Positions 13,401-55,132 of a DNA stretch of 64,000 bases are shown here, one piece after another. Origin of the DNA: Asterias rubens. Its lineage: Eukaryota. The DNA is taken from contig NC_047080.1 of NCBI RefSeq assembly GCF_902459465.1, positions 806,001 to 870,000 on the forward strand. The letters run 5' to 3'. Position 1 is the stretch's first letter. Each line of letters begins with the position of its first letter. The notes beneath the pieces were generated by a model. It ran no database searches, was not told the origin of the DNA, and saw only the letters and a program-made list of their open reading frames with translations. The position numbers were made by a program, and so were the translations under genes.

Positions 13401-14602
13401 GTCATGCTTAGCAGGTTTTTGGGGTACCCGTTTTGTATAACAATGTAATTACAAGGCCGCTTGCTGGCTTCTGCTAAGCAAACTTTTGGTGGTAACCAGA
13501 TTTTTGAAAGTGCCCCGCTATGAACCATATACAATTAATACACAAGGCATGGTATTTTGGTGGGTAATTAGGAAGATCTTACTTGCTCTTTCCAGGAAGC
13601 GTCTTGTGAGCGCTATGATGCAGAACACAGATATGAACTTTGTTGATGAGCTGTCTCATATAGAAGAGAAGATTCAAGAGATCACGAAGATGGCCGAGAC
13701 GACTGAAGCTATCATTCAACAGAGGGCGCTAGACGGTAGGTATATTTTTCACCTGATATATTTGTTACCAAATAGCGTCCTTCAAAAGTCTCCATTCGAA
13801 GGTAAATTGTATGCAAAATAATCAATCTATAGATATTTTTTCTATGATAACTAAGTACATTTTTTTTCTTAAATTTCATTGTTTTGATCCGTTGCTTTTT
13901 AATACAGGAGATAAAATGGCTTTGAAGTCTAATCCGAGTACGTCTACTGAGGACGTAAAAGTTACTTCACCATCAAACGCCAATGAATCAAACACTGGTT
14001 CACTAAGCCAAGGACAAATACCAGACAGTCCAGAGCGGTCATCGACAAGCAGTAATCCAAAGTCTGCAAGTAAGCTTGTCATGGCTGTAGAACCTTCGCT
14101 AAGAGATTTAGATCTAAACAAAACAGCAGCACAGGGGAAAGTGCCTATGCCACCCCTTCAAGAGCCAGAAGTATACGAAGCAGCTCCGCCACGCCCACCT
14201 GAGCCTACAGCAGTCAGTGCCCCACAGTACCACGCCCCACCTACGCAGCTCACACAGCCAGACATCCGGTTTCCATATATGCCATACGCCCAGTTCCCAA
14301 ATTCAGAGTTTGTATCCCGCTCTAATCAGTATTTTCCACGACTCTCGTTCCCACCACCACCCAGTGGTTATCATCACCAAGGTTCGGGTGACTTTATCCC
14401 TCAGTTGTACCCAAACCAGCCGTCGTGGATGGAACCTGTACCCCAAGGGACATTCCTGCATCTACCCCCACCAAACCTTGGTCCCATGTCACATGTCCCA
14501 CCACCACCGAGACCTTTCATGGGTACTTTGCCACCTAGGTACTGTCCCAACTCAGGAGGGCGCTGGATGCCCGGCCCAGGCCAGGGTCAAGGGATGTGGT
14601 GA
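1449..14602 (+). CDS. TDRD5: Tudor domain-containing protein 5 (LOTUS/OST-HTH + Tudor; germline piRNA pathway), about 24 exons
   Basis: Exon 1 (1449-2295) encodes an N-terminal extended LOTUS (LKKSIKALVISAPLGLTVKEVELDY...GY...FLQDIPD...HIQSLVSRQK) and a second LOTUS. GT-AG exons keep the frame at 2791-3059, 3316-3372, 3555-3726, 4095-4249, 4665-4770, 5099-5136, 5349-5539, 5911-6058, 6564-6625, 7990-8056, 8322-8405, 8862-8993, 9301-9475, 9787-9903, 10185-10284, 10973-11102, 11764-11843, 12342-12404, 12609-12699, 13209-13312, 13596-13735 and 13908-14602. There is a single Tudor domain (GQVCCALYLSDNNWHRAII...VLYVDYG), which fits TDRD5 rather than the three-Tudor TDRD7. Confidence 0.88.
2333..2426. 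mobile_element. Short palindromic MITE-like element in TDRD5 intron 1
   Basis: CCAGTAACTGGG...CCCAGTTACTGG ends with an internal ACTTCTAGAAACTA/TAGTTTCTAGAAGT stem. Related ends occur at about 45160-45290. Confidence 0.5.
6075..6265. mobile_element. MITE of the GCTTAGCA-rich family
   Basis: TIR GCCCAGTTTCATAAAGC...GCTTTATGACATTGGGC. Degenerate relatives occur at about 3780-3930, 5640-5840, 45290-45450, 48110-48350 and 56110-56170. Confidence 0.55.
6985..7812. repeat. 34-bp minisatellite, about 24 copies, in a TDRD5 intron
   Basis: Unit CATTCTGTATGGGGTGTGTACTTTAGATATTT(T/C)A repeats with a period of 34 (6987, 7021, 7055...). Confidence 0.95.
9020..9273. mobile_element. Partial TTAA-flanked MITE (same family as 61580-61910)
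   Basis: Ends GTAATTACCAATAGTGTCCACTGCCTTTAA, and the interior is nearly the same as 61720-61910. Confidence 0.7.
10735..10845 (+). mobile_element. 3' end of a non-LTR retroelement (LINE/SINE) with (ATT)n tail
   Basis: GTTCAGCGCCTAGGAGC...GGCGCTATATAAATTTCC followed by about 17 ATT units; this resembles L2/CR1-type 3' ends. Confidence 0.45.
11220..11320 (+). mobile_element. tRNA-derived repeat (SINE-like), copy A
   Basis: A box TAGCTCAGTTGGTAGAG and B box GGTTCGAATCC, with no intact acceptor stem. Shares the upstream motif AAATAGGGAGACYRCCA with the copies at 22144 and 33286. Confidence 0.65.
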
Positions 14603-40121: not shown

Positions 40122-43100
40122 TTAGAGGAAATAAGGTGTGGTGGTACGTGTAGGAATAACTCGCTCAGCATCGGGTACAGCTCTGAAGAGTTTGGCCTCT
40201 TTAGAGGAAGTATCTCGGAATGCTAGGATAGAGGCGATGTTGCCGCATCGATAGCAGTAGTTAGGAGCAGACCAAACTGTGACGAGCTTCTCATCAAACA
40301 TGTATTTGTAGCCTTCATGGACGAGCTGGTGAGCTCGACAGATGAGTTTTAGATTGTTGATGTGTACAAACTGCAGAGAGTAAAAGTGATGAAGAAACTA
40401 TTGTATCATCAAAGGAAAATATAACTTAATCTGATGCTACAGCCTGAAAAAAGTAAAAGTAGTCTCTTGACTGGAAATCTGCATCAAGTTGACATTGAAA
40501 GTAATATGCTTTTGATAATGAATTTTAAAACTGAATACTGGCAGAATTTGTTTATAAATGTATTCCGGCCTTTGAAATGTTCCAATCTAAATTTATAATT
40601 TCACTATCGAGGTGCCCTTTACCAAGTAGTAAACCTTGCTTCCTGCCTCTTGCCCTTTCAGAAAAACTGTGCAGTGAAAAGTTTATAATCTTATTTGAGC
40701 ATACCTGGGGTTTTCTTCCACCAATAGTGTAATAGAGTTTCTACAGAATTTCAAAAAGTCACGAAAGTCAAACCTTTTTCCCCGGATCTATTCACGATAA
40801 ACAAGGAATTGCAATACACCTGCCTATTGCCACTCACCTCGTTTACAACCTTGGCACCAAACAGCCACCCTGCTCCTCTTGGACTGATGGCCCATGTATC
40901 TACATCCTCTGGATCTGACCACACCAAATGTAAGACAAGTTAAGAATCAATTCTAAATCAGCAACAAATGAATACAATCTGAAAGATTCAGGACATACTT
41001 CCAAAAGAGTTGCATGTGGTAAAGTTGTGACTAATAGTGCAGTGTGGATCATCAATGTACAACACACAACAAACGTAACATTTATTTTCTACACCACTCT
41101 ATATGACCTTAGTGTTGTAGTGTTGTGATGGAATATGAACATTGTTAACAAGGCCTTGACTGAATTTGACAACTCCTTCATCTTGTAACAGTTATAGACT
41201 TGACTGGATGCCTGATACTCAATGGAGGAAATTGCCTCTATTGCTCCTGGTCTTTACTGGTGCCCATTAGACTGCCCAACAGGAAGTTACAACTTCCTTA
41301 AAGAGGTACCTTTACCAAGGAGAAGACACATTGTCGCCCCTGCCCTTCAAAACAAAGCACCAGGCATGTTTCTTGAGTTAAAAACTTGTTTCAAAAGGAT
41401 ATCACAAAAGGCTCCTTTGTGTGGGATCTCCTGAGCTCTCTCAATGGTTCGGATTTGATCGAGGGTCTTGACATCTGGTGAGAGTCCGCCATGGACACAA
41501 AGAATCTGCTCATCAATTATCTGCAGGAGAAAGTTACAGAAAATGTTCAAATAACATCTTTTTAATTACATTAACTACTTGTTATACTGTGAAGAAAAAA
41601 GTAGTCACCAACTACATGTATAAGTTAATACTTACAGCAGCTACTGTAAGGAGGTCAAAGACCTTTGTGCAGTATCTCCAGGCATTTGCATTCCCATATT
41701 TGGTCTGACACTCATCTGCATATTGAATATATGAATATAAAACAACTTAAGTAGTTATCACTTATGTGTTATACAGATATGACACAACTTCTCCACAACA
41801 TGAAGGGAGATGATGGACGATTCTTGCCATTTATGATTTGAGATTGCAAATTTTTTTCAAAATCTACCCATAGTTTTTTACCGTAGAATCCATAAACTTG
41901 GGTGATTTGTCTGCTTTCATGGTTGCCTCGGAGAAGCGTGATGCGATCTGGCCACTTGGCTTTGAGTGTCAGTAACCTGGTGAAGGTTTCTAAACTGTAG
42001 TAACCCCTGTCAACAAAGTCACCCTAGGGAGGAAAAAGGAAACAAATAGTGACAATTGCGCACCTTAAATTAAATCAAGAGTGGAACAAAACTGAATATT
42101 TTAATGCTGGCTTGACTTCATCAAAGGATAAAAAGGGATTACGATAAATAAGATTAAACGACCTGGTGTTTATAACAGGAGATACAACTTATTATACTAT
42201 CATAATCTAAGCTTACCATAAACACATAGTTGGTGTCGGGTATCTGTCCCCCAGTTCTGAACAATTCCTCTAAATCATAAAACTGTAAAGAAATAATCAG
42301 AAACATAAAATTGTGAAACCGATACTCAAATGCGTAATAATATCAGAAATTATGAAGAAATAATCAATTGCTTGTTCATTAAAAACTACTAATGTAGTTT
42401 CTCTCAATAACAACACAAGAAAAAACTGCATAATTTCAAAAAAATAATTGACGCAACAATAAGACTTAAATTGGAGGACGGTGTTGAAGTCCTACCTGGC
42501 CGTGTATATCACCGCATACTGTGACTGGAGTTGATACTGGTTGAACATTGGATTCTTCTAATAGAAGGTCACAAACGTAGTCACATAATTTCTGAAATAT
42601 ATAAGAACATCCAACAATATAAACTCGAACTTTATGAAGCAAAATTGTTCATGGTTTCCTTTTCTAATCTTTTATTTTAAATTTTTAAAACTTTTAAAAT
42701 CATCAAAAATCATTGATCATCGATGACAATGAATAAATGATGATGCAAACAAAAATAATGTTTTGACATGGTTGGGGATGTCAAACAAAACCATATAAAT
42801 TCATGTAATAAATTTTAATAAAATTATATTTAAAAACAAACACAAACAGTGTTTTTTTTTTAATTTTTATTATTATTGAGTCTTACTCTTACAACTTAGG
42901 CCTATTTATTTATTTATTTAATTCAAAAAATCTTAATTAAAATTACTTTGGTATGCCCTTTACTTCACTAAATTCATGGATAACTTTCCGTATGGCGCCA
43001 CCACCTTTTCACTTATTTTTACAGAAAGGGATATCTCATTGAGGTAAATTAGATACTATACTATTTCATATCGAATTAAAAAGTGGTGGCGCCATACGGA

Positions 43101-43462
43101 AACTTTTCCAAATTCATGTCCATATAACCCTATTGCAAGCCAAAGTACAGCACAAAATGACCATCAAGCTTTGTTGGATGTGTAGTGTTTTCTTTTTGTG
43201 TTACTCACCTCAGGCTCATGGTCAGGCAATGGGCAAGTGAAGTAAATCGTTAGTTGGCCACAAAATTATCTGACGATCACTTTTATTTCACAGTTTACTT
43301 ACAGATCTACTCTACGAAATCATATATAATTTACACAAGTATTCCTACGAAACGTCCTGTCTTTTTAGTACATGTTATCTTTACCTTTAAGTCGTTTTCG
43401 GGGAGGTATTTGCACTCTTTTGCGATGTCAATCCATCTATCAACTGACGACAGTTCCGCCAT
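40122..43462 (-). CDS. PPP6C: Serine/threonine protein phosphatase 6 catalytic subunit, conserved copy (PPP6C-a), 8 exons, 306 aa
   Basis: Exons (minus strand) 43462-43385, 42591-42496, 42283-42218, 42023-41882, ~41713-41634, 41520-41403, 40929-~40838 and 40370-40122. The protein reads [26 protein letters not shown]...GDIHG...GDFVDRG...RGNHE...[11 protein letters not shown]...RTTTPYFL*. The CKYLPE N-terminus and TTTPYFL C-terminus are diagnostic of PP6. Confidence 0.94.
40930..41402 (-). other. U12-type (minor spliceosome) AT-AC intron in PPP6C-a
   Basis: On the minus strand the 5' end is ATATCCTTTT, the branch site is TTCTTAAC and the 3' end is AC. Removing it restores ...GAFC-D-LVWSDP. Confidence 0.9.
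42979..43109. mobile_element. About 130-bp MITE with 9-bp TSD AAATTCATG, in PPP6C-a intron 1
   Basis: AAATTCATG is present at 42970-42978 and 43110-43118. Same family as 30806-30937. Confidence 0.85.
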
Positions 43463-43510
43463 TTTGCAAGTCTGTAATGTGACGAAGGGCGCCCTCTATT
43501 GGTGAAAAAG
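43463..43510. promoter_or_regulatory. 48-bp spacer between the two divergent PPP6C start codons; contains the palindrome AGGGCGCCCT and a CTCF-like motif GCGCCCTCTATTGG
   Basis: The minus-strand ATG is at 43462 and the plus-strand ATG at 43511. The motif lies at 43489-43502. A regulatory role is inferred from position only. Confidence 0.5.
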
Positions 43511-46500
43511 ATGGCTGAAGCTTCATGCATAGACAGATGGATTGATATCGTAAAAGGCTGCAAATATCTGCCAGAATACGACTTTAAGGTAGAATATTTT
43601 GCTTTGGGATTGTAAGGGATAAACCAGAGAATAGATATAATTGATTTAATGGCCCTGGGATATGTGTATAAGTCTCAGTTAATTATACTTTCTGACACAA
43701 ATTCTGATGAGTAATTTTTCTACACACACAGGGCATACACAAGGGGGGGGGGGGAGGGCAGGACAATGTGTCAGCTAGCTCAGTGTGTGTGAGTCATCTA
43801 AGTTAAGACACGCCCCCTCCCCAAAAAGTGGGAAAATATAAATTGGCTTCTAATAAGCTTAGTTCTATAAAAATCCCTTGACCAGTAGGGTGACTAACCT
43901 TGTCCTCCCCAAACAATATCTCTATTATTTAGGGCCACATTACATATTTTTCCTCACCAAGGTCGCAAGGATCTATTTTATTGAAACAGAATTAGAAAGC
44001 AGCGGTACAGCAGTCTGGTGGTGGTGGGGGGGGGGGGGGGGGGGGAGGGGGGAGGGGGAGGGGGGAGGGGGAGGGGGGAGGTGTTAACTGAGACGTAGTC
44101 TATCTGAGTGATAGTTTTGAAAGACTCACTGATTCACTCTTAGTCTTATTATAAACCTGAAATCAAAAGAACTGATTAAGGTTTCTTTAATTAAATTGAA
44201 TTGTTTTTTTTCCCCCCAGAAATTATGTGAGCATGTGTGTGAGATACTTCTAGAGGAGAGTAATGTCCAGCCTGTATCAACACCAGTCACAGTGTGTGGC
44301 GACATCCATGGACAGGTATTATTCCACATAATAGTCACAGTGTGTGGCGACATCCATGGACAGGTATTATTCCACATAATAGTCACAGTGTGTGGCGACA
44401 TCCATGGACAGGTATTATTCCACATAATTGTTTGCCAACTGGCTGACAATGTTTAGTCGATTTCCAGCTGAACCAGGGCTCTCAAGGCAGGTCAGGGGTG
44501 GATTTCACAAAGATAGTCCTCGCTTAGGACTAGTCCTAGGAGTTGTTAAAAACTTAAGGCTAATCCTGAGTTGAGATAAGACTAGTCTGAATTCTTTGTG
44601 AAATCCACTCCAGGAATTACAAGGAGATCGCGGAGGCCATGGCTTGTTGCCCTGGTCTTGGCCTTGGTCCTTGGTTCCCAAAAACTTTAAGATTTTCCAA
44701 TGAGTGCACTTTGAAAAATTAGAATGGTCTTGCCCTCCCTGGATAACTTCTGACAGAGTGAACAAAAGAGAGAGACCTGTGTTACTGTGTACAATTTCTG
44801 CGATTGGGATTTTTGAATTAGTTTACTCTTTGTTTTTCTGGAGACCGGTAGAAATTTAAACAGCATTTTCCTTTTTTCCTCTCTAATATAGTTCTATGAT
44901 ATGGAAGAATTGTTCAGAACTGGTGGCCAGGTTCCGGACACCAACTATGTGTTCATGGTGAGTATTTATTACCAACAATACTGTATCTTTCAAAAGTTTA
45001 GGGTTTGACCTAAGGTTTTGAAAATGTTGTTGCCATAGCATGTTTTCCACCCCTTAATGGGGATGCTGAACTGGGATGCATGGAAGACGACCATCAGAGT
45101 TTCCAGAGAATGCGTTGGCTGAAGACATCCTCTCGCTCAACTGACTGACTGACCACCAGGGCCTAGACCTAAGAACTGGGGCGATGTACTCTCTTTTTTC
45201 AAAAATTGTTCATTATCAGTCGTACTTGTATGAACAATGTCAAACTTTCGAAAAAAGGAGTACAGTGCCCCAGTTACTGGGTCAAACCAGGGCCCAATTC
45301 ACAGAGCTGCGCTTAGCTCAAGATATTGCTTAGCAATTTGCTGCTCGGCAGGCTACCAGCCACAAATTGAACATGTGACATGATATTTAAGCACAATTTC
45401 TGTTTACTTACTATTTTTATGTTAAGCAGCTCTGGAAATGGGTCCAGCTTATCATGATCCCTCCATGCAATCTTGTCAAGTCTTTAAAAATAATTTGTTC
45501 CTCCCTAGGGTGACTTTGTTGACAGGGGTTACTACAGTTTAGAAACCTTCACCAGGTTACTGACACTTAAAGCCAAGTGGCCAGATCGCATCACGCTTCT
45601 CCGTGGCAACCATGAAACCAGACAGATAACGCAAGTTTATGGATTCTATGGTAAGAACTTTTGTAGATTGCTGATGTTGAAAAAATATCTTTAAACCCTC
45701 CAAATGGGCTGACTAAACTTTTATCATTTTCTTCATGATGTGCTGATGTCACTATTTCTGCAACAAGCTCTTCTTAGTTGGTGTGCAATTCAAGCTGCTA
45801 TCTTGAAATACCTAAATTGTGTACAATTCTCACACTAACTATTGCAGATTCCTTAAAAAGGAAATTCAATGCCTGGGTTATTGTTGCTTATCATTTATGG
45901 TACAGTTTTTCCTCAAACATAACAATCCGAATAGTCTCTGGAGAATTGTTTAAGAATGTTTGCCATATTGAATCATGATTTTCATTCCTCCATTTCATTC
46001 TGAATTGTACCTCACATAAGTACAGTTTTCTTGTTTCAGCAAAATAAAAAAGAATGCGTCTGGACTCACACCAAAATAAATTGGTTTTCATTCCACATTT
46101 ACGAACGTTTTCAATATATCAACGTTTTTACTGGACATAGAAATAAAAATGTAAATGACTTCACGACCATCTACTGTCCTCATATAGGCATAAAACACTG
46201 CCTGTTCAAACTCGTTTACGTCTTTGACCTGTGGATGTTTGCAAGTTTAATCCACTTTACTTTAAAACAATGAGTTTAATCCATTCTGAGGTGCTTCGCT
46301 CCTGTGATAGATTAAGCAGATTAACGATGGCTAACAAAGCAAACAAAATTAAAGCAAAATTAAGCCTGGAATTACTGAGACTCTCAGAGGTCACCAAGTC
46401 CTTGACCTCTTTGGCCCCGATCTTGGCTTTGGTGCCCCCTCATAAGCCGCCCATAGACTTTAAGATTTTCCAAACGCCTTGCAATATGAAAATAGCTTTA

Positions 46501-49292
46501 ACCAGGCCTGACATATCCCAAAAATAAACAAACCTTTGAGGTAACCAGCGCTAAACTGCAGCGTGCTTTTAAGGACCTAAAATATTTTCAGGAAAAGTTG
46601 AAAGGCGGCTAGATGAAATTGTGCTATTCTCTCTTCCATGCCATGCATTGCCATAAACCATTGGGTCATCAATCATCATTTTGAAGTGTGGAATCATTCA
46701 ACTATGCTGCACTGCATGCTAGCCAGGTAAGATCATTCTTTGACATTTGTCTGCTCATTGTTTTGCATTTCTTCTGAAAAACAATTTTCCATTACCATGA
46801 TTCTACATGTTTGGCAAATCCTTTCTGTTCTAACTATCTTGATTTCTAGATGCAGTGGTTCAATTGCTTGTTTAACTTTCATGAATCATTTATTTATGCG
46901 AGATGGTCAATTCATTTTAAATTAACTTAATCAAGAACATTCTTCATCACTTATAAGTGATGAAGAATGTTTTTGATTTCTGATGTAGGGCCAAAAACCA
47001 AATGACATTCTAAGGTTAATCTTTGTTTAATTGTTAATTTCTAACATGAATAAAGATGAATTACTACAACAAAATAATGTCCATGAATTTTACATATTTC
47101 CAAAATTGTTTTAAACCATTACAAATTTTCAGATTTTAACTGGAATATGGAATGCACTATATACATGTACTTAGGTTTTTGAATAATTTGTTTTCTTTCA
47201 GATGAGTGCCAGACTAAATATGGGAATGCAAATGCGTGGAGATACTGCACAATGGTCTTTGACCTCCTTACAGTAGCTGCTGTAAGTATGAAGTCCAAGT
47301 CCCTTGCATATTTAAATTAATTGGAGAGTTTTGGCCTCTAGGTGGCAGCAGACAATGTTGGTCGTAGACAACTTCACAAAATACTGGGAACTAGTGCATT
47401 AGCCATTGAATGAGGTGCATGCTGATCTAGTTAGAGACCAAAGTTTGCATTAACAAGGCCAGCATGCACTTCATCCCTGGGCTAACTCCCATTTCTGTGT
47501 ATGTGAAGTTATTTTTTAATGAACTGGCCGCGATTCTGAGGTTGTCCCTTAAGTCTACTGCCACATATTGTCCAAAAAAGTATCTTATAAAATTTTCTTA
47601 ATCCTTCATCTCCAACTCCTCCTTGACCGGTCCCCAAAGAAGGCGGGGCTTGGTAGGGGCGGGAAAGGTTTTAAGAGTCCCCTACCTATCTAGGCCCTGC
47701 TGCTCTTCCATTTGTCTTTACTTTTGTAGAAGTTAGAAACAAATCTAAACTGAATTATAGAGATAAGGCAAAAATGATCCACCTTAATCAGAGTCGGGAC
47801 CGGGTAAAAAACCTCTTCTCAGTTTTCAAGGTCACAATGAGATTTCTAGCAGTAACTTTGCATCTTTTTTCTGTTTTCTTAGATCATTGATGAGCAGATA
47901 TTCTGTGTACACGGTGGATTATCTCCAGATATAAACACATTGGATCAGATCAGGACGATTGAAAGAGCTCAAGAAATCCCGCACAAAGGACCATTTTGTG
48001 ATATCCTTGCAATACATCACCCTGATCAGGGCCAGATTTCATGTCTCTGCCTACCACAGAATTATTCTCTTAGGCCCATGTAAAGTACTAGCTTCTATGG
48101 AACATAATAAATGTGCAGAATTTTGCAGTAAGCAGAGCCATGAAATTGGGCCTTATCTAATTAAATTGCAGCTTGTTTTCCTGCTGTCCATTTTTCAAGT
48201 ATCATGAAGCAATTTTAAAAGCAGAAATTATTCCTGAGAACATTTATTTTCCAGTGGAAAGAGGCATATCGTGACATTTCATTGGTAACGTGTTCCTGCT
48301 AAGCAAGATTTTTTCTATGCTAAGGACCAAATGAGCTGCTTAAACAGGTATCACTTTTAAGGAGTGAAGTTGTTTCCCTTAACTGACACACATCTTGTCT
48401 GGTCCGACCCTGAAGATGTTGATACCTGGGCTATAAGCCAACGTGGAGCAGGATGGCTGTTTGGTGCTAAGGTGGTCAGTAAGGTAACTTCACTCAGACC
48501 TTCTTATTCCACAGCGTTATTAAAAATATCCTCAAACCCTAAGTTAATGATTTCTACATGTATACGATTTCCAATTTTTTACACCATGTACACAGGCCTA
48601 GATTTTCAACTCAAAAACGGCAAGGCCATTTTAATTTTGTAGAGAGTACTTCCATTGGGAATCTTTTAAGTCTATGACAACTTTTTGAAGGTGCACCAAG
48701 GCCAAGAGCAGGGCAACAAAGGCCTTGGCCTCTGTAGTCTCCGTGTATATCCGGGCCTGGGGTCGATTTCTTAAAGAGTTAGGCTAGTCCTCGGAGATAT
48801 CAAAAACGTATGGCTAGTCCTAAGTTAGGACCCGTAACTCGTCCTAACTCGAGATAAGACTAGTCCTAACTCTTTGTGAAATCCACCCTGGATACGTTTG
48901 AGATATTTTCAAATTAACTGAATGTGTTTTTGGCGAACTACTTCTCAAAAACTGATTTGCATTCATGACATGAAAAATTGTAAAGAGAAGGCCTTCTCTT
49001 TTCTTTCCCTTTTGTAACTAGCTTGAACTTTCTTTATTTTTAGTTTGAACATGTCAACAATCTGTCCTTGATTTGCCGTGCTCATCAGATAGTTCATGAA
49101 GGCTACAAATACATGTTTGATGATCAGATAGTCACAGTATGGTCTGCTCCTAACTACTGCTACCGATGCGGCAACATCGCTTCCATCTTAGAATTCAAAG
49201 ATGCAGACACAAGAGAAGCTAAACTCTTCCGAGCAGTCCCCGATAGCGAGAGGGTTATACCAGTAAGAGCGACTGTTCCTTATTTCCTGTGA
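43511..49292 (+). CDS. PPP6C: PP6 catalytic subunit paralog, diverged copy (PPP6C-b), 8 exons, 306 aa
   Basis: Exons 43511-43588, 44220-44315, 44892-44957, 45509-45650, 47202-47281, 47883-48000, 48392-48483 and 49044-49292 total 921 nt in an open frame. The catalytic motifs GDIHG, GDFVDRG, RGNHE, HGG, RAHQ and SAPNYC are intact, and the protein ends ...RATVPYFL*. Confidence 0.9.
44286..44429 (+). repeat. 48-bp tandem triplication spanning the PPP6C-b exon 2/intron 2 junction
   Basis: GTCACAGTGTGTGGCGACATCCATGGACAG|GTATTATTCCACATAATA occurs three times (44286, 44334, 44382). Confidence 0.95.
44495..44611. mobile_element. MITE (GGGGTGGATTTCACAAAG...CTTTGTGAAATCCACTCC)
   Basis: 18-bp TIR. Relatives occur at about 48757-48890 and 21630-21800. 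Confidence 0.7.
48001..48391 (+). other. U12-type AT-AC intron in PPP6C-b
   Basis: The 5' end is ATATCCTTG, the branch site TTCCCTTAAC lies at about 48374-48383 and the 3' end is ...ACAC. No GT/AG alternative restores the frame GPFC-D-LVWSDP. Confidence 0.9.
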
Positions 49293-49755
49293 TGAGAAAG
49301 TAGACTAATGAACTGGAATGAGTATTGTGAAATAACTGAGGATCTGAGTAATGTGTTCTTAATAATTACTACTAGTCTTTGTTTCAAGACGGTAATACCA
49401 GTAAGAACGAATGTTCCTTATTTTCTCTGATGGCGGCGTAGACTAATGAACCGGAATGAGTATTGTGAAATAACTGAGGATCTGAGTAAGGTGTTCTTAA
49501 CAATTACTACTAGTCTTTGTTTCAAGACGGTAATACCAGTAAGAACGAATGTTCCTTATTTTCTCTGATGGCGGCGTAGACTAATGAACTGGAATGAATA
49601 TTGTGAAATAACTTGAAGATATGAGTGAGGTGTTCTTGTTGATTTCTCTTCTTGGTTTCAAGACTGGTAATACTAGTAAGAGCGACTGTTCCTTATTTCC
49701 TTTGATGGTAGCATAGACTTTTTAACTGGAATGACTACTGTGAAATAACTTGAAC
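49257..49755 (+). repeat. 138-bp tandem array (about 3.6 copies) starting in the last codons of PPP6C-b
   Basis: Unit starts ATACCAGTAAG at 49257, 49395, 49533 and about 49670. Each copy carries a copy of the C-terminal codons and the TGA. Confidence 0.9.
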
Positions 49756-51104: not shown

Positions 51105-53253
51105 TTAAGAATAGTCCTTATCTTTGAGAAGCAGTTTACCCTTCTTTTGAAGTCGCTTAACTTTCTTGGCTGTGCGAGCATCCGTCCTGCCTCTGAGATT
51201 TGTCTTTCTCTTCTTCTGTCGATCGGCCTTCAATTGTGTCGTCTTCTCCTCTCTCTCTGTCCATTTCTTCTCACTATGCTTCTTCTTCTCCTTCTTCTTG
51301 CGTATGGATTTCTTAAGAAGCTCAGGATCGTCTCTAACTGTCTTACCCTCAGCTCTGTCCAATGCGGCTTTCCACTTATCCTGTTTGATCATCTCCTCGG
51401 CTTTATCGGGATTACTCTTCTTGACTTCTGCAATCTTCTGCTTCTTGGCTTGCACCTTCTTAAGAAGTCCTTCATAGTCACGCCCACTCAGATTCTCCTC
51501 ACCGCTTTTGCGTTTCTTCTTTTTCTTGGTCTTCTTAGATTTATTTTCCTCAAAGTCAAACTTACTGAAAGTTACTTTTAGTGGCTTACTCTGTTCTTGC
51601 TCTTGAGTATCCCCCTCATGTACCTCGTTCCCGTCCTGCTTTTCCCCGCCTCCATTTTGTGTCCTCTTCGCTTCCTTATCTTTCCTCTTCTCATCCCTAG
51701 TTGCTTTAATAGCATCATATCTTTCTTGTTTCTTCTTCTTCTTCTCATTTACTTCTTTCATCTTCCTGGAGGCTTTCTTTGACATAATGTTCCCTTCTAG
51801 TGATTTAGCCTGTCTTTTGTCACGTAACTGTTGTATTTTCTCCTGCACCTTTTTTCTAAGGTCATCTAAGCTTGCGCTACTTTGAATTCTTTCTACACTG
51901 ACTGGCTGAGCAGGTTTAAGTTGGGTCCATTCTTTGCCATCTGTTCAGCGAAAAGAAGGTAGAAGGAGAAAAGGGGAAACATGAAATTTAATTGAATGGT
52001 GTATTCGTCAAGTATATAAAGCTAAAGAAATTTGCAGCAAAATTTGTGTCAATAATTCTAATAGAACTGGGTTCCTATAAAGCACTTTACCACACCCCTG
52101 AGGTTATCAAAGCACTCATTGTTGTTTCCAGAAGTAGTGAAACAGCTATGTTTTGGATCCAAGTCCCATCTTATTAATGAAGCAGTAATGGTCAAGAGCA
52201 GTCTTGCTTAAGGACACATGTGTCAAGACCGGGACTCCAAAGGACACATGTGTCAAGACCGGGACTCCAAAGGACACATGTGTCAAGACCGGGACTCCAA
52301 AGGACACATGTGTCAAGACCGGGACTCCAACCCATGGTCAGCTGATCAGAAACACCAAAGCTTGAGACAAGCGCACTTAAAAGCTCAACCACGACACACC
52401 ACATATTGTGTTGGTAATTTGCACAAATTACTTGGGTTTTAACTTACCACTTTCTCCCATGCCTTGGAATCCTCCATCAACCTCCTCCATTTCATCCCCA
52501 CTGCTCTCCTCATCCTTAGCAGATACAACTTTCTTCTCCTCTTCCGCCTCCTCCATCTTCATCTTCTCCTTCTGTCTCTTTTCTCTCTCCTCTTGTTTCT
52601 TGACGAGTGCATCTTGGAGGTCAGTCACTGTCAGCTCCTGCTGGGCATCTGGGTCCATCCTCTGTTTCTTCCTGCTCGTTTTTGTCGTCTTTTCCTTCAG
52701 CTCTTGTCTTGGTGCTTCCTCTAAATTAAACAGGAAAACAAACAAAAAATCATTTAAAAACAGGCTTTTAATGTATTTTCATGATCAGGCCTTTAACTTC
52801 GCTCTTAAGGCGCACAGCAACCTCTGGTTAGGGGGAAATTGTGAAATTGTTAGTTGTATTGGAACCTTGCAGAAGGCACCACAGGAACCACTACAATTGA
52901 TGTGGGTTATTTCGAGGCATGCATGATCTTCTAAAGAATGAAATTGATAAGTCTGGACAGTTAGTTGTGTTGCGGGAAATAATGGCAGGTTTCAAGGTAT
53001 CGCTGCAAAGCCAAGATAAGCAATGTAGACACCATAAAATATCAGACATTTGTTACTTTGTAAAATGTTTGAGTTGTTGAAACCAACCTTTCATATTCTT
53101 AAAGAATTTCTCCCCTGCCTTCTTAGCTCCCTTCTCGAGGTAGTACTTGGCTGGGATGAGGTTGACCATCCTCTTGAAGTATTCATTCTTCTCCTTCAGG
53201 CTCTTCCGGAGGGCGCTGTCATCCCCCATTGTGTCAATGTGGTTATTTGTCAT
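51105..53253 (-). CDS. SURF6: Surfeit locus protein 6 (nucleolar, RRP14/SURF6 domains), 3 coding exons
   Basis: N-terminal LKEKNEYFKRMVNLIPAKYY (RRP14-like). The C-terminal SURF6 domain includes FSKFDF, KWKAALDRAEGKTVRDDPELLKKSIRKKKEKKKHSEKKWTER. Exons about 53253(or 53229)-53088, 52720-52448 and 51940-51105. The start codon choice is uncertain. Confidence 0.88.
52185..52400 (-). mobile_element. tRNA-derived SINE with an internal 30-bp unit repeated four times
   Basis: The minus strand reads GTGTCGTGGTTGAGC...TGGTGTTTCTGATCAG...GGGTTGGAGTCCCGGTCTTGACACATGTGTCC. The 30-bp unit is at 52211, 52241, 52271 and 52301. Confidence 0.7.
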
Positions 53254-55132
53254 CAGATTTCGGTCCAAGAGGTAGTCCACTCCTTTGACAATCAAGTGGT
53301 TGAATAACGTTCTTATGTATGTTTCTCTTGCTACTGCAAGTGTTCTTCCATGGGCTAAATTGTGAATTCTGAAAACACAGTACAAGAAAGATAAATTAGT
53401 TAATTTAATTTTATTTGTGCGCTGGTCAAATCAAATGATTGAACTTTTTAATTTTACAACTATCTGTCAAGGACTCAAGGAAATGTTTCTCCCAAAAGAA
53501 AATTGGCAGTTATTTATCTATTACACAGATTATTAGCACACAATGAAAAAATGTGTAGCTTTTATATTTTTGTTTACTTTTCCTTATTAGAAAATTAATT
53601 GTTGAAAATGAAATTGAAGTTTTGGCTTAGCTAGCATTTTTTCTTTTCCTCATTTTTACAAAAGAAAAGCTCATCCCCAAAATTGTTCTTCACTCGGTGA
53701 ACCATTGCTCTAACTATACACTGTGCCTGTTATAGTACAATTTCTATGCACATGGACGATCTTCAATGATGATCATCCCCCCCCCCCCCCACCAAACTCA
53801 GTGTCATTTGTGTCGGAAATACACGACACTCCCTTTAACATCACATCAACATTGCACATGTGTGTGATTAACAAAATCATAAGTTTCTACTAGACGGAAA
53901 ATTCCGATCCCAAGAGTAATTTGATTTGATATTAATCATAGTTACCTACAAAATAAAATACCAATATGACTCTTACCCATTGAAAAGACCTGGAACACTA
54001 GCTCGCCACTTAAACCATTTATTTAGCAACCTTTTTAACTTGGCCACTTCAAAGGTGCGCTACCGAATTTACACACACGCACGAAATTGTTCAGTCCACG
54101 TGTTAGACTTAATCGTTGAGGGCGCGCTAATAAACAGCTGATATTATATTAAAGGGAATATGCACAGAAATTTGTTATAAATTGTCTCTCAATTTTAAAT
54201 ATTACGAAAAGTGTGGACATTTATTTCTTCAACGAGTATAAAATAAAGTTAAATTAACCAATGCATTTCGTGTTGCTGCAAAGTGCATATTATATGCACT
54301 ACTTTATTAGTAATCACTATGGACTATAATTTCACGTTTCAATAAACCTTTAGTAGTTTGATTTTTTTTTAATGTTACCAGCAGAATGATACAAATCAAA
54401 TGCCATAATTATTTTGTAAACAACTTAATTTATAGATAGGCCTATTTATTTCAATTAATTTCAAACAAATCTCAATAACTAAGTTTGTTTTCTTTCTTCT
54501 AGAACCTCAACCCCTTCTTCTAAAAACTAAATTTATTGTTTTCAAAAAACAAATAGTTAGGTTACAACTCATTTAGTTCCAATAATAAAATTTAAAAAAT
54601 CATATTTTGTTCTTTTTACAAGGAATTAAATAAAATAAATTGTAATCTTAAAACAAACCTGTAACCTTGTTAAATTAAAAAAAGATAAAACACAAGTCAT
54701 CTGACATCGCAATTTGTTTATAATAAACCAACTGTTTTCTTTTTCCATCCTTTGGATTAAATATGCATCACCAGATTTTTGTTTAACTTAAAAGTTTGTT
54801 TTAGTATGGTTCTTCAATGAAACCAACTCATCAATTGTTTTGTAAACAAGTCTCGCTTTTAAATGTTTGTTTCTTTCCACAAGATTCTTCTTTAAAATTC
54901 AATTCTTTTATCAAATAAAAAAGACACAAGGGAGAACTGGCTGAGTTAGTTTGTTTTGTCAACAAATTTGCTTAAAACTCATTTAATTCAAATGATTAAA
55001 CAAGTTTTCTTTCTAGAAGAAATCAAATGTTAATACAATGTTTTTCTTTAATACAAACCTAAAATCTTGTAAAATTAAAAGATAAACACTAGCCATCTCC
55101 CTTCGCTATTTTTTTTTATATGATAAATTGAC

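What the first reader, a model, noticed from the sequence alone, without database searches (positions are those of the whole stretch)
40122..49292. Two intact PP6 catalytic-subunit genes head-to-head with start codons only 48 bp apart
Seen: two complete 8-exon, 306-aa PPP6C genes on opposite strands with identical intron positions. They differ at about 39 residues (about 87% identity by my count) and keep all catalytic motifs. The ATGs are at 43462 (-) and 43511 (+). Copy a is nearly the canonical sequence. Copy b has most of the non-canonical changes (ISPRG to ISQRG, GAFCD to GPFCD, CTKVF to CTMVF, TTTPYFL to ATVPYFL, and an altered N-terminus) and longer, MITE-rich introns. Known: PPP6C is normally single-copy and highly conserved, and its N-terminal region contributes to SAPS/PP6R subunit specificity. 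Inference: 48 bp cannot hold two separate 5' UTRs and a promoter, so the UTRs must be tiny or overlap, and each gene's promoter probably lies within the other's exon 1 or intron 1. That would be a mutually embedded paralog pair, open to transcriptional interference or switch-like, tissue-specific (e.g. germline) expression of a second PP6 isoform.
Basis: partly seen in the sequence, partly recalled or inferred. Interest (0 to 1): 0.82.

Follow-up and report, generated by a model that had tools for sequence, protein, structure and literature searches.

The report
Back-to-back twin PP6 phosphatase genes
A sea star carries two working copies of the PP6 phosphatase gene set back to back with start codons 48 bases apart. 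The pair is shared by three sea star genera and already sits in public gene models, so it is a tidy but fairly ordinary duplicated pair on a very small two-way promoter.

Summary
There are two 8-exon, 306-aa PP6C genes on opposite strands, with ATGs at 43462(-) and 43511(+), 39 amino-acid differences and identical intron positions.

The pair is not peculiar to this genome. Acanthaster and Patiria have the same head-to-head pair (spacers of 69 and 63 bp) between the same neighbouring genes, and the B copies are already annotated there as 'PP6C-like'. A tree gives one duplication before these sea star orders split.

Copy A is almost frozen (98% identity between orders, dN/dS about 0.007). Copy B evolves 10-20 times faster but is still under purifying selection (dN/dS about 0.055). 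Both are correctly spliced in RNA. The A:B ratio ranges from about 13:1 to about 0.7:1 across four samples.

No assembled transcript crosses the spacer, which suggests very short 5' UTRs. The A start codon lies in a TISU/YY1-like context. The spacer holds a 9-base block that is invariant in the three species. In Asterias this block is part of a CTCF-type motif that is about 300-fold over-represented in the genome.

Transcriptional interference, or a switch between the two genes, remains untested.

Verdict: a new member of a known kind, namely a paralog pair on a compact bidirectional promoter.

The parts
40122..43462 (-). PP6C copy A (canonical). It has 8 exons and encodes 306 aa. Exons: 43462-43385, 42591-42496, 42282-42217, 42023-41882, 41715-41636, 41520-41403, 40929-40838, 40370-40122.
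   Evidence: Spliced model. Introns 1 and 2 are confirmed by RNA joints in four runs. It is 98% identical to the Acanthaster and Patiria orthologs.
43511..49292 (+). PP6C copy B (fast-evolving, 'PP6C-like'). It has 8 exons and encodes 306 aa. Exons: 43511-43588, 44220-44315, 44892-44957, 45509-45650, 47202-47281, 47883-48000, 48392-48483, 49044-49292.
   Evidence: Spliced model. Introns 1-3 are confirmed by GT..AG RNA joints. It groups with P0269 and P0271 with 99/95 support.
43463..43510 (.). 48-bp spacer between the two ATGs, read as a shared bidirectional core promoter.
   Evidence: The spacers are 69 bp in Acanthaster and 63 bp in Patiria. The half nearest A is conserved and the half nearest B varies.
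43489..43502 (+). GCGCCCTCTATTGG, a CTCF-type motif. Its first 9 bases (43489-43497) are invariant in the three sea stars.
   Evidence: Alignment. GCGCCCTCTAKTGG occurs 322 times in the genome against 1 for the reversed control, mostly in unrelated flanks.
43455..43466 (-). CAAAATGGCGGA: the ATG of A in a TISU/YY1-like context, matching 10 of 12 positions of SAASATGGCGGC.
   Evidence: Consensus taken from PMC3177215.
43507..43518 (+). AAAGATGGCTGA: the ATG of B in a weaker TISU-like context (9 of 12).
40930..41402 (-). Intron 6 of A, AT-AC U12-type. It has an ATATCCTT donor, a TTCTTAAC branch site and an AC end.
48001..48391 (+). Intron 6 of B, AT-AC U12-type. It has an ATATCCTT donor, a CCCTTAAC branch site and an AC end.
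   Evidence: The same intron type occurs in all four Acanthaster and Patiria genes.
44285..44428 (+). Perfect 48-bp x 3 tandem repeat covering the last 31 nt of B exon 2 and its donor site. It creates three identical in-frame donors.
   Evidence: RNA uses the first donor, joint 44315 to 44892.
49249..49750 (+). 138-bp x 3.6 tandem repeat starting in the last 44 nt of the B coding sequence and continuing behind the stop codon.
41875..42037 (-). A exon 4. It is 94-95% identical in DNA to B exon 4 (45495-45657), which I read as a gene-conversion tract.
41625..41718 (-). A exon 5. It is 95% identical in DNA to B exon 5 (47199-47292), which I read as a second conversion tract.

Best explanation
This is an old inverted tandem duplication of the PP6 catalytic-subunit gene in sea stars. 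The two copies have stayed head to head on one very small two-way promoter.

Shown:
- Both genes are intact, correctly spliced and transcribed.
- The same arrangement, between the same neighbours, exists in Asterias-type, Acanthaster and Patiria genomes, so the duplication predates the split of these orders.
- Copy A is the conserved, canonical enzyme. Copy B evolves much faster but under clear purifying selection, so it encodes a working, diverged isoform.
- In the Asterias lineage, exons 4 and 5 of the two copies have much lower synonymous divergence than the other exons.

Inferred:
- The low divergence in exons 4 and 5 comes from gene conversion.
- Transcription of both genes starts inside the 48-bp spacer, with 5' UTRs of roughly 10-20 nt.
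- Translation from such short leaders is helped by TISU/YY1-like ATG contexts.
- The conserved CTCF-type block in the spacer is part of the shared core promoter.
- The two genes are not locked to one expression ratio, which suggests some division of labour. There is only one SAPS-type regulatory subunit gene for both to use.
For: Gene models and the 39 differences.

Copy number: only two PP6C copies in the genome.

Synteny:
- A 306-aa Metallophos gene lies on the - strand, ending 69 bp (Acanthaster) or 63 bp (Patiria) before the + strand 305-aa 'PP6C-like' gene.
- My extracted B models translate exactly to P0269 and P0271.
- The neighbours Ro60/TROVE, SURF6, OGG1 and an LRR gene are shared.

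Tree: A clade 93/89, B clade 99/95, both together 97/90, with B branches 10-20 times longer.

Selection:
- A orthologs have dN/dS 0.005-0.009.
- Acanthaster B against Patiria B has dN/dS 0.055.
- A against B has dN/dS 0.07 with dS saturated.

Conversion: in exons 4-5, Asterias A-B dS is 0.22, against about 1.0 in Acanthaster and 0.77 in Patiria.

Expression:
- GT..AG joints are seen for A introns 1-2 and B introns 1-3.
- Contig depth A/B is 45.6/42.7 in X2 and 15.3/4.2 in X1.
- Junction reads are 53 against 4 in X13. In X14 they are 2-3 for A against 6 for B.
- Contigs end at 43460 (A) and start at 43513 or 43524 (B), and none crosses the spacer.
- Five of 18 molecules begin at 43460 in raw reads.

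Promoter elements:
- An invariant GCGCCCTCT block.
- The motif occurs 322 times against 1 for the control.
- The CTCF motif is the top motif of constitutively open chromatin in sea star and sea urchin (PMC13317027).
- TISU consensus and its 12-nt median 5' UTR come from PMC3177215 and PMC2518114. The matches here are 9-10 of 12 for A and 8-9 of 12 for B.

Regulatory subunit: one SAPS locus only.
Against: - Contigs cannot prove transcript starts, and the raw reads came from a sister species. The true TSSs are therefore unmeasured.
- The TISU match is imperfect and is weak for the B genes.
- The full 14-base CTCF-type motif is present only in Asterias. Only its 9-base core is shared with the other two species.
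- Part of the genome-wide excess of the motif comes from repeat families.
- The variation in expression ratio rests on four samples of unknown tissue and on low counts for B.
- I could not retrieve PP6C from sea urchins, brittle stars, sea cucumbers or crinoids, so the age of the duplication beyond sea stars is unknown.
- Low dS in exons 4-5 without any intron similarity could also reflect selection on the nucleotide sequence rather than conversion. That fits poorly with the normal dS seen in the other two species.
Confidence: 0.8

Rival explanations
1. One reading: the two genes are mutually embedded, with overlapping 5' ends. Transcription of one interferes with the other, giving switch-like, tissue- or germline-specific use of the second isoform.
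For: - The spacer is only 48 bp, so two pre-initiation complexes can hardly sit there together (geometry).
- The A:B ratio differs from about 13:1 to about 0.7:1 between samples.
- Synonymous divergence is reduced in A exon 1.
Against: - No RNA contig or listed joint crosses the spacer, and both genes' contigs stop at the ATG.
- Both genes are found in the same runs at comparable depth in X2.
- No conserved element lies in either intron 1.
- The tissues of the runs are unknown.
Confidence: 0.2
2. The two genes are a plain, co-regulated dosage pair. Copy B is a redundant back-up with no function of its own, and its faster evolution is only relaxed constraint.
For: - They share one promoter region and are both present in all RNA sets examined.
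- All catalytic motifs are unchanged.
- There is a single SAPS partner gene.
Against: - B has been kept intact in both orders, which I place from memory at about 200 million years or more, with dN/dS 0.055.
- Sixteen positions are fixed differently from an invariant A in all three B copies, ten of them to the same residue.
- The A:B ratio varies widely.
Confidence: 0.15
3. Copy B is a decaying duplicate or pseudogene, or the pair is an assembly artefact (a haplotype folded back on itself).
For: - B carries odd tandem repeats at an exon-intron border and at its 3' end.
- B has longer, repeat-rich introns.
Against: - B has an intact 306-codon frame with correct splice sites.
- Spliced RNA uses the normal donor.
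- dN/dS is far below 1.
- The copies differ at 19% of coding bases.
- The same pair is present in two other genera's assemblies.
Confidence: 0.02

Closest known systems
Bidirectional (head-to-head) gene pairs on a shared promoter, including paralog pairs such as COL4A1/COL4A2 and histone H2A/H2B (recalled from memory)
   Same: The two genes are on opposite strands, start a few tens of bases apart, are both transcribed, and have kept this arrangement over long evolutionary time.
   Different: The spacer is at the extreme short end (48-69 bp from ATG to ATG). The two products are alternative catalytic subunits of one enzyme, not partners in one complex. Promoter sharing itself has not been tested.
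PPP6C / Sit4 / PpV, the PP6 catalytic subunit of the PPP phosphatase family
   Same: - Both copies are 84-90% identical to annotated PPP6C.
- All metal-binding and catalytic motifs are present.
- The C-terminal YFL is kept.
- The nearest solved structure is PP2A C-alpha.
   Different: Sea stars have a second, fast-evolving copy with 16 lineage-fixed changes, concentrated in the first 30 and last 95 residues. The valvatid B copies have also lost the Cys of the YRCGN loop.
TISU element (SAASATGGCGGC; YY1 site and initiator of translation on very short 5' UTRs; PMC2518114, PMC3177215)
   Same: The ATG lies inside an AAAATGGCGG-type sequence. Transcripts seem to have almost no leader. The gene is a housekeeping type.
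   Different: TISU was defined in mammals. The match here is 9-10 of 12 for A and 8-9 of 12 for B. Neither YY1 binding nor TSS position has been measured.
Promoter-proximal CTCF-type motifs in non-vertebrate deuterostomes (PMC13317027; bioRxiv 10.64898/2026.10.19.760054)
   Same: The reverse complement, CCAATAGAGGGCGC, fits the CTCF core as I recall it. The motif is strongly over-represented in this genome. [quoted passage not shown]
   Different: Here it sits inside a 48-bp spacer between two start codons. Only its 9-base core is conserved between orders. Occupancy is unknown.

Membership tests
PP6 catalytic subunit (PPP family) | Metallophosphatase domain with GDxHG, GDxVDRG, GNHE and HGG motifs | tested here: met
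   The motifs read directly in both translations. PF00149 is on record for both genes of the Acanthaster and Patiria pairs.
PP6 catalytic subunit (PPP family) | Closer to PPP6C than to PP2A or PP4 catalytic subunits | tested here: met
   A is 89.5% and B 84% identical to annotated vertebrate PPP6C. Both group with annotated PP6C sequences in the tree, though no PP2A or PP4 outgroup was included. Other genomic matches are much weaker.
PP6 catalytic subunit (PPP family) | Forms holoenzymes with SAPS-domain (PP6R) and ankyrin-repeat subunits | not testable with these tools
   Only one SAPS locus exists in the genome. Binding by either copy was not examined. No solved PP6C chain turned up to map the changes onto.
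Bidirectional promoter gene pair | Two genes on opposite strands, 5' ends facing each other, less than 1 kb apart | tested here: met
   The ATGs are 48 bp apart, and 69 and 63 bp apart in two other genera.
Bidirectional promoter gene pair | Both genes transcribed | tested here: met
   Spliced joints for both genes appear in RNA contigs and raw RNA reads.
Bidirectional promoter gene pair | One DNA segment drives both directions | not testable with these tools
   This needs reporter assays. The only conserved non-coding DNA is the spacer.
TISU element | Sequence SAASATGGCGGC around the ATG | tested here: inconclusive
   The A genes match 9-10 of 12 with the ATGGCGG core intact. The B genes match 8-9 of 12.
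TISU element | Lies within about 30 nt of the TSS, giving a 5' UTR of about 12 nt | tested here: inconclusive
   Contigs end at the ATG and read starts pile up at 43460, but no true TSS data exist.
U12-type AT-AC intron | ATATCCTT donor, TCCTTAAC-like branch site close to the 3' end, AC terminus | tested here: met
   All three features are present in all six genes. Splicing of this particular intron was not seen, because it lay outside the stretch on which reads were laid.
CTCF-type binding site | Match to the CTCF core motif and non-random abundance in the genome | tested here: met
   13 of 14 positions match GCGCCCTCTAGTGG, a core recalled from memory. The motif occurs 322 times against 1 for the control. 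Occupancy is not testable here.

The most novel reading that the evidence does not exclude
The 48-69 bp spacer may be a minimal two-way core promoter. Two back-to-back start sites with very short leaders would flank a CTCF-type site, and they are too close for both to be loaded at once. Occupancy of that site would then decide which PP6 isoform a cell makes. Sea stars would get a regulated choice between a canonical and a diverged PP6 catalytic subunit, both working with a single SAPS partner.
Probability: 0.12. Interest if true: 0.6.

Novelty: new member of a known kind. Interest (0 to 1): 0.35.

Why it matters
Sea stars are a classic system for oocyte maturation and cell-cycle phosphatase work. 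Anyone knocking down or measuring "PP6" there needs to know that two catalytic subunits exist, one of them fast-evolving, and that they share a promoter.

The locus is also a compact natural test case. Its only conserved non-coding DNA is a stretch of about 35 bases. That makes it suitable for studying how a two-way promoter with almost no 5' UTRs works and how inverted paralogs exchange sequence.

It does not change what is known about PP6 or about bidirectional promoters in general.

Tried and rejected
1. Getting a full-length query. The spliced proteins have no reference, so I aligned exon pieces to full-length anchors. Alignments A1, A4 and A5 misplaced several pieces. A6 was clean and was used.

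2. Finding the canonical PP6C of other echinoderm classes. None appeared among the best 120 hits of three searches, nor in ten clusters I opened. Sea star A is about 90% identical to vertebrate PPP6C. I suspected that this hides the echinoderm proteins inside vertebrate-led 90% clusters, but the clusters I opened showed none. Whether sea urchins or other classes have a B copy therefore stays open.

3. The idea that the CTCF-type motif sits just upstream of short-leader ATGs across the genome. By eye, about 9 of the first 20 sites looked like that. In a counted sample of 40 sites only 5 did, against 1-3 in the controls, and several sites belong to repeat families. I dropped the idea.

4. Similarity between intron 4 of A and intron 4 of B, as a sign of one long conversion tract. 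None was found, so two short tracts are more likely.

5. Conserved elements in either intron 1: none found.

6. Rfam scan of the locus: nothing found.

7. Literature on a PP6C duplication in echinoderms or starfish, or on a PPP6C minor intron: nothing relevant found.

8. A solved PP6C structure for mapping the B-specific changes: none found, and the nearest is PP2A C-alpha.


Full report
**What is there.** Reading the region and splicing the open frames gives two complete genes.

- Copy A runs on the - strand from its ATG at 43462 to its stop at 40122.
- Copy B runs on the + strand from its ATG at 43511 to its stop at 49292.
- Each has eight exons of 78, 96, 66, 142, 80, 118, 92 and 249 nt, in the same phases, and encodes 306 residues.
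- The proteins differ at exactly 39 positions (87.25% identity). The coding DNA is 81.3% identical.
- The two ATGs are separated by 48 bp.
- All catalytic motifs and the C-terminal YFL are intact in both.
- The inverted-repeat finder recovers seven of the eight exon pairs on its own.
- The whole assembly (417.6 Mb, 150 contigs) has only these two PP6C copies. Other matches are weaker phosphatase relatives.

One thing was missed: intron 6 of both genes is an AT-AC intron with an ATATCCTT donor and a TCCTTAAC-like branch site, which is the U12 type.

**Which organism.** The proteins are 98% identical to those of the sea stars Acanthaster and Patiria. I treat it as a forcipulatid sea star.

**The pair is old and shared.** The spliced proteins have no reference, so I built a profile from exon pieces aligned to two full-length PP6C anchors.

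- That search returned two sea star proteins named 'PP6 catalytic subunit-like': P0269 from Acanthaster planci and P0271 from Patiria miniata.
- In both species the 305-aa 'like' gene on the + strand is preceded by a 306-aa Metallophos gene on the - strand, which ends 69 bp and 63 bp before it.
- I extracted all four coding sequences using the Asterias exon plan. The B models translate exactly to P0269 and P0271, which validates the method. The A models are 98% identical to Asterias A.
- The neighbours are shared too: Ro60/TROVE on the A side, then SURF6, OGG1 and an LRR gene on the B side. SURF6 is inverted in Asterias relative to Acanthaster.
- A maximum-likelihood tree with 17 PP6C sequences from other phyla puts the three A copies together (93/89), the three B copies together (99/95), and both groups together (97/90).

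This means one duplication before the Forcipulatida-Valvatida split. From memory I place that split at roughly 200 million years or more. I could not obtain PP6C from other echinoderm classes, so the duplication may be older still.

**Selection.**
- A orthologs have dN/dS of 0.005-0.009.
- Over the same Acanthaster-Patiria split, B has dN/dS of 0.055 and 93% protein identity.
- B branches in the tree are 10-20 times longer than A branches.
- A against B within Asterias has dN/dS 0.07, with synonymous sites saturated.
- Sixteen positions are invariant in A but different in all three B copies, ten of them to the same residue. Changes concentrate in the first 30 and the last 95 residues.

B is therefore a constrained, diverged isoform and not a dying copy.

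**Gene conversion.** Exons 4 and 5 of Asterias A and B are 95% identical in DNA (dS 0.22), while the other exons are 74-85% identical with saturated dS. In Acanthaster and Patiria the same exons show dS of about 1.0 and 0.77. The homogenisation is thus specific to the Asterias lineage. Similarity stops within about 14 nt of each exon border, and the introns between them are unrelated. Two short conversion tracts are the simplest reading.

**Expression.** I laid four runs on 42100-48050.

- Two contig sets are from the same species (X1, X2). The tool only guesses that these are RNA, but the contigs lack introns and the genome has no intron-less copy.
- These contigs carry A introns 1-2 and B introns 1-3 removed at exactly the predicted GT..AG sites.
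- Contig depths for A and B are 45.6 and 42.7 in X2, and 15.3 and 4.2 in X1.
- The other two runs are raw RNA reads of a close sister species. In X13, 53 reads cross A intron 1 and 4 cross B intron 1. In X14, 2-3 reads cross the A junctions and 6 cross B intron 2.
- B uses the first of the three identical donors created by a perfect 48-bp x 3 tandem repeat at 44285-44428.

Both genes are expressed, and the A:B ratio varies from about 13:1 to about 0.7:1. The tissues of the runs are coded, so no tissue statement is possible.

**How 48 bp can serve two genes.**

No contig or listed joint crosses the spacer:
- The A contigs of two independent runs both end at 43460.
- The B contigs start at 43513 and 43524.
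- Five of 18 molecules in the raw reads begin at 43460.

Library preparation usually loses the first nucleotides of an mRNA. I therefore read this as 5' UTRs of roughly 10-20 nt that start inside the spacer. This is an inference, because contigs cannot show true starts.

The start-codon contexts fit this reading:
- The A start codon in all three species lies in AAAATGGCGGA, matching 9-10 of 12 positions of the TISU element SAASATGGCGGC (PMC3177215).
- In mammals TISU binds YY1 and supports translation from leaders with a median length of 12 nt (PMC2518114).
- The B genes match less well (8-9 of 12).

Conservation in and around the spacer:
- Between species, the only conserved non-coding DNA around the two first exons is the A-side half of the spacer. 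It ends in an invariant GCGCCCTCT block.
- The block is preceded by a conserved GTGA(C/G). Read on the A strand this is TCAC, an initiator-like sequence 13-18 nt before the ATG. That reading is inference only.

The motif in Asterias:
- The block extends to GCGCCCTCTATTGG, which matches the CTCF core as I recall it at 13 of 14 positions.
- GCGCCCTCTAKTGG occurs 322 times in the genome against once for the reversed control.
- Most flanks are unrelated, though some copies belong to repeat families.
- Published ATAC-seq work reports the CTCF motif as the top motif of constitutively open chromatin in sea star and sea urchin (PMC13317027).
- A recent preprint argues that promoter-proximal CTCF is the older mode of action (10.64898/2026.10.19.760054).

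Exon 1 of A also shows lowered synonymous divergence between Asterias and the valvatids: pS 0.40 against about 0.73 elsewhere, Fisher p = 0.015 and 0.04. The difference is not significant between the two valvatids. This is weak support for regulatory sequence lying inside the exon.

- I found no sign of overlapping transcripts, and no conserved element in either first intron.
- Interference or a switch remains possible, because two initiation complexes can hardly fit within 48 bp and the ratio does vary. It is untested.

**Other context.**
- The genome has a single SAPS-domain locus, so both catalytic isoforms would share one PP6R-type partner unless B works differently.
- No solved PP6C structure turned up. 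PP2A C-alpha is the nearest.
- No paper in the searched library describes this duplication.

**Verdict.** This is a real, well-preserved paralog pair on an unusually small bidirectional promoter, and a new member of a known kind. It is useful to people working on sea star phosphatases and as a compact promoter model, but it is not a surprise to the field.

Noticed in passing
window 44285-44428: A perfect (100% identical) 48-bp x 3 tandem repeat spans the last 31 nt of B exon 2 and the first 17 nt of intron 2. It gives three identical in-frame donor sites. RNA joints use the first. Use of the later donors would insert 16 or 32 residues that repeat the GDIHG motif.
   Followed up: partly
window 49249-49750: A 138-bp x 3.6 tandem repeat (88% matches) begins in the last 44 nt of the B coding sequence. 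The region behind the stop therefore carries further diverged copies of the '...VIPVR..VPYFL-stop' ending.
   Followed up: no
window 40930-41402 (-) and 48001-48391 (+); L007 and L008: Intron 6 is an AT-AC U12-type intron in all six sea star PP6C genes, with an ATATCCTT donor, a TCCTTAAC-like branch site and an AC end. I found no paper linking PPP6C to a minor intron.
   Followed up: partly
window 41875-42037 / 45495-45657 and 41625-41718 / 47199-47292: Exons 4 and 5 of the two inverted copies are 94-95% identical in DNA (dS 0.22), while their flanking introns are unrelated. I read this as Asterias-lineage gene conversion between inverted paralogs that lie 3.5-5.5 kb apart.
   Followed up: yes
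whole genome G000; e.g. C3:4984840-4984942 and C3:20356469-20356578: GCGCCCTCTA(G/T)TGG occurs 322 times in the genome against once for the reversed control, and the T variant looks about as common as the G variant. Some sites form close opposed pairs about 90 bp apart. Some lie in repeat families, for example L031/L034/L040/L050 and L010/L043/L053.
   Followed up: partly
window 51139-53256: The SURF6/RRP14 gene next to copy B lies on the - strand here but on the + strand in Acanthaster (L007 16126-18503). This is a small local inversion inside otherwise conserved gene order.
   Followed up: no
G000:C6:4885328-4897943 (-): This is the only SAPS-domain (PP6 regulatory subunit) locus found in the genome. 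The regulatory subunit was not duplicated along with the catalytic one.
   Followed up: no
window 42896-43293, 44488-44686, 45085-45482, 47274-47472: Intronic repeats in both genes reach very high depth in all RNA sets (thousands-fold in contigs), with many loose ends. These look like abundant, transcribed interspersed repeat families.
   Followed up: no
window 44026-44081; L008 10254-10272: A G-rich microsatellite (GGGGGAGGGGGGA units) lies on the sense strand of B intron 1. A G-run sits in the same intron of Patiria B. This may be coincidence.
   Followed up: no
window 13721-13729 (-): The only other GCGCCCTCT in the window lies a few bases before a GGTAGGT donor-like site, in what looks like a coding exon of another gene.
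   Followed up: no
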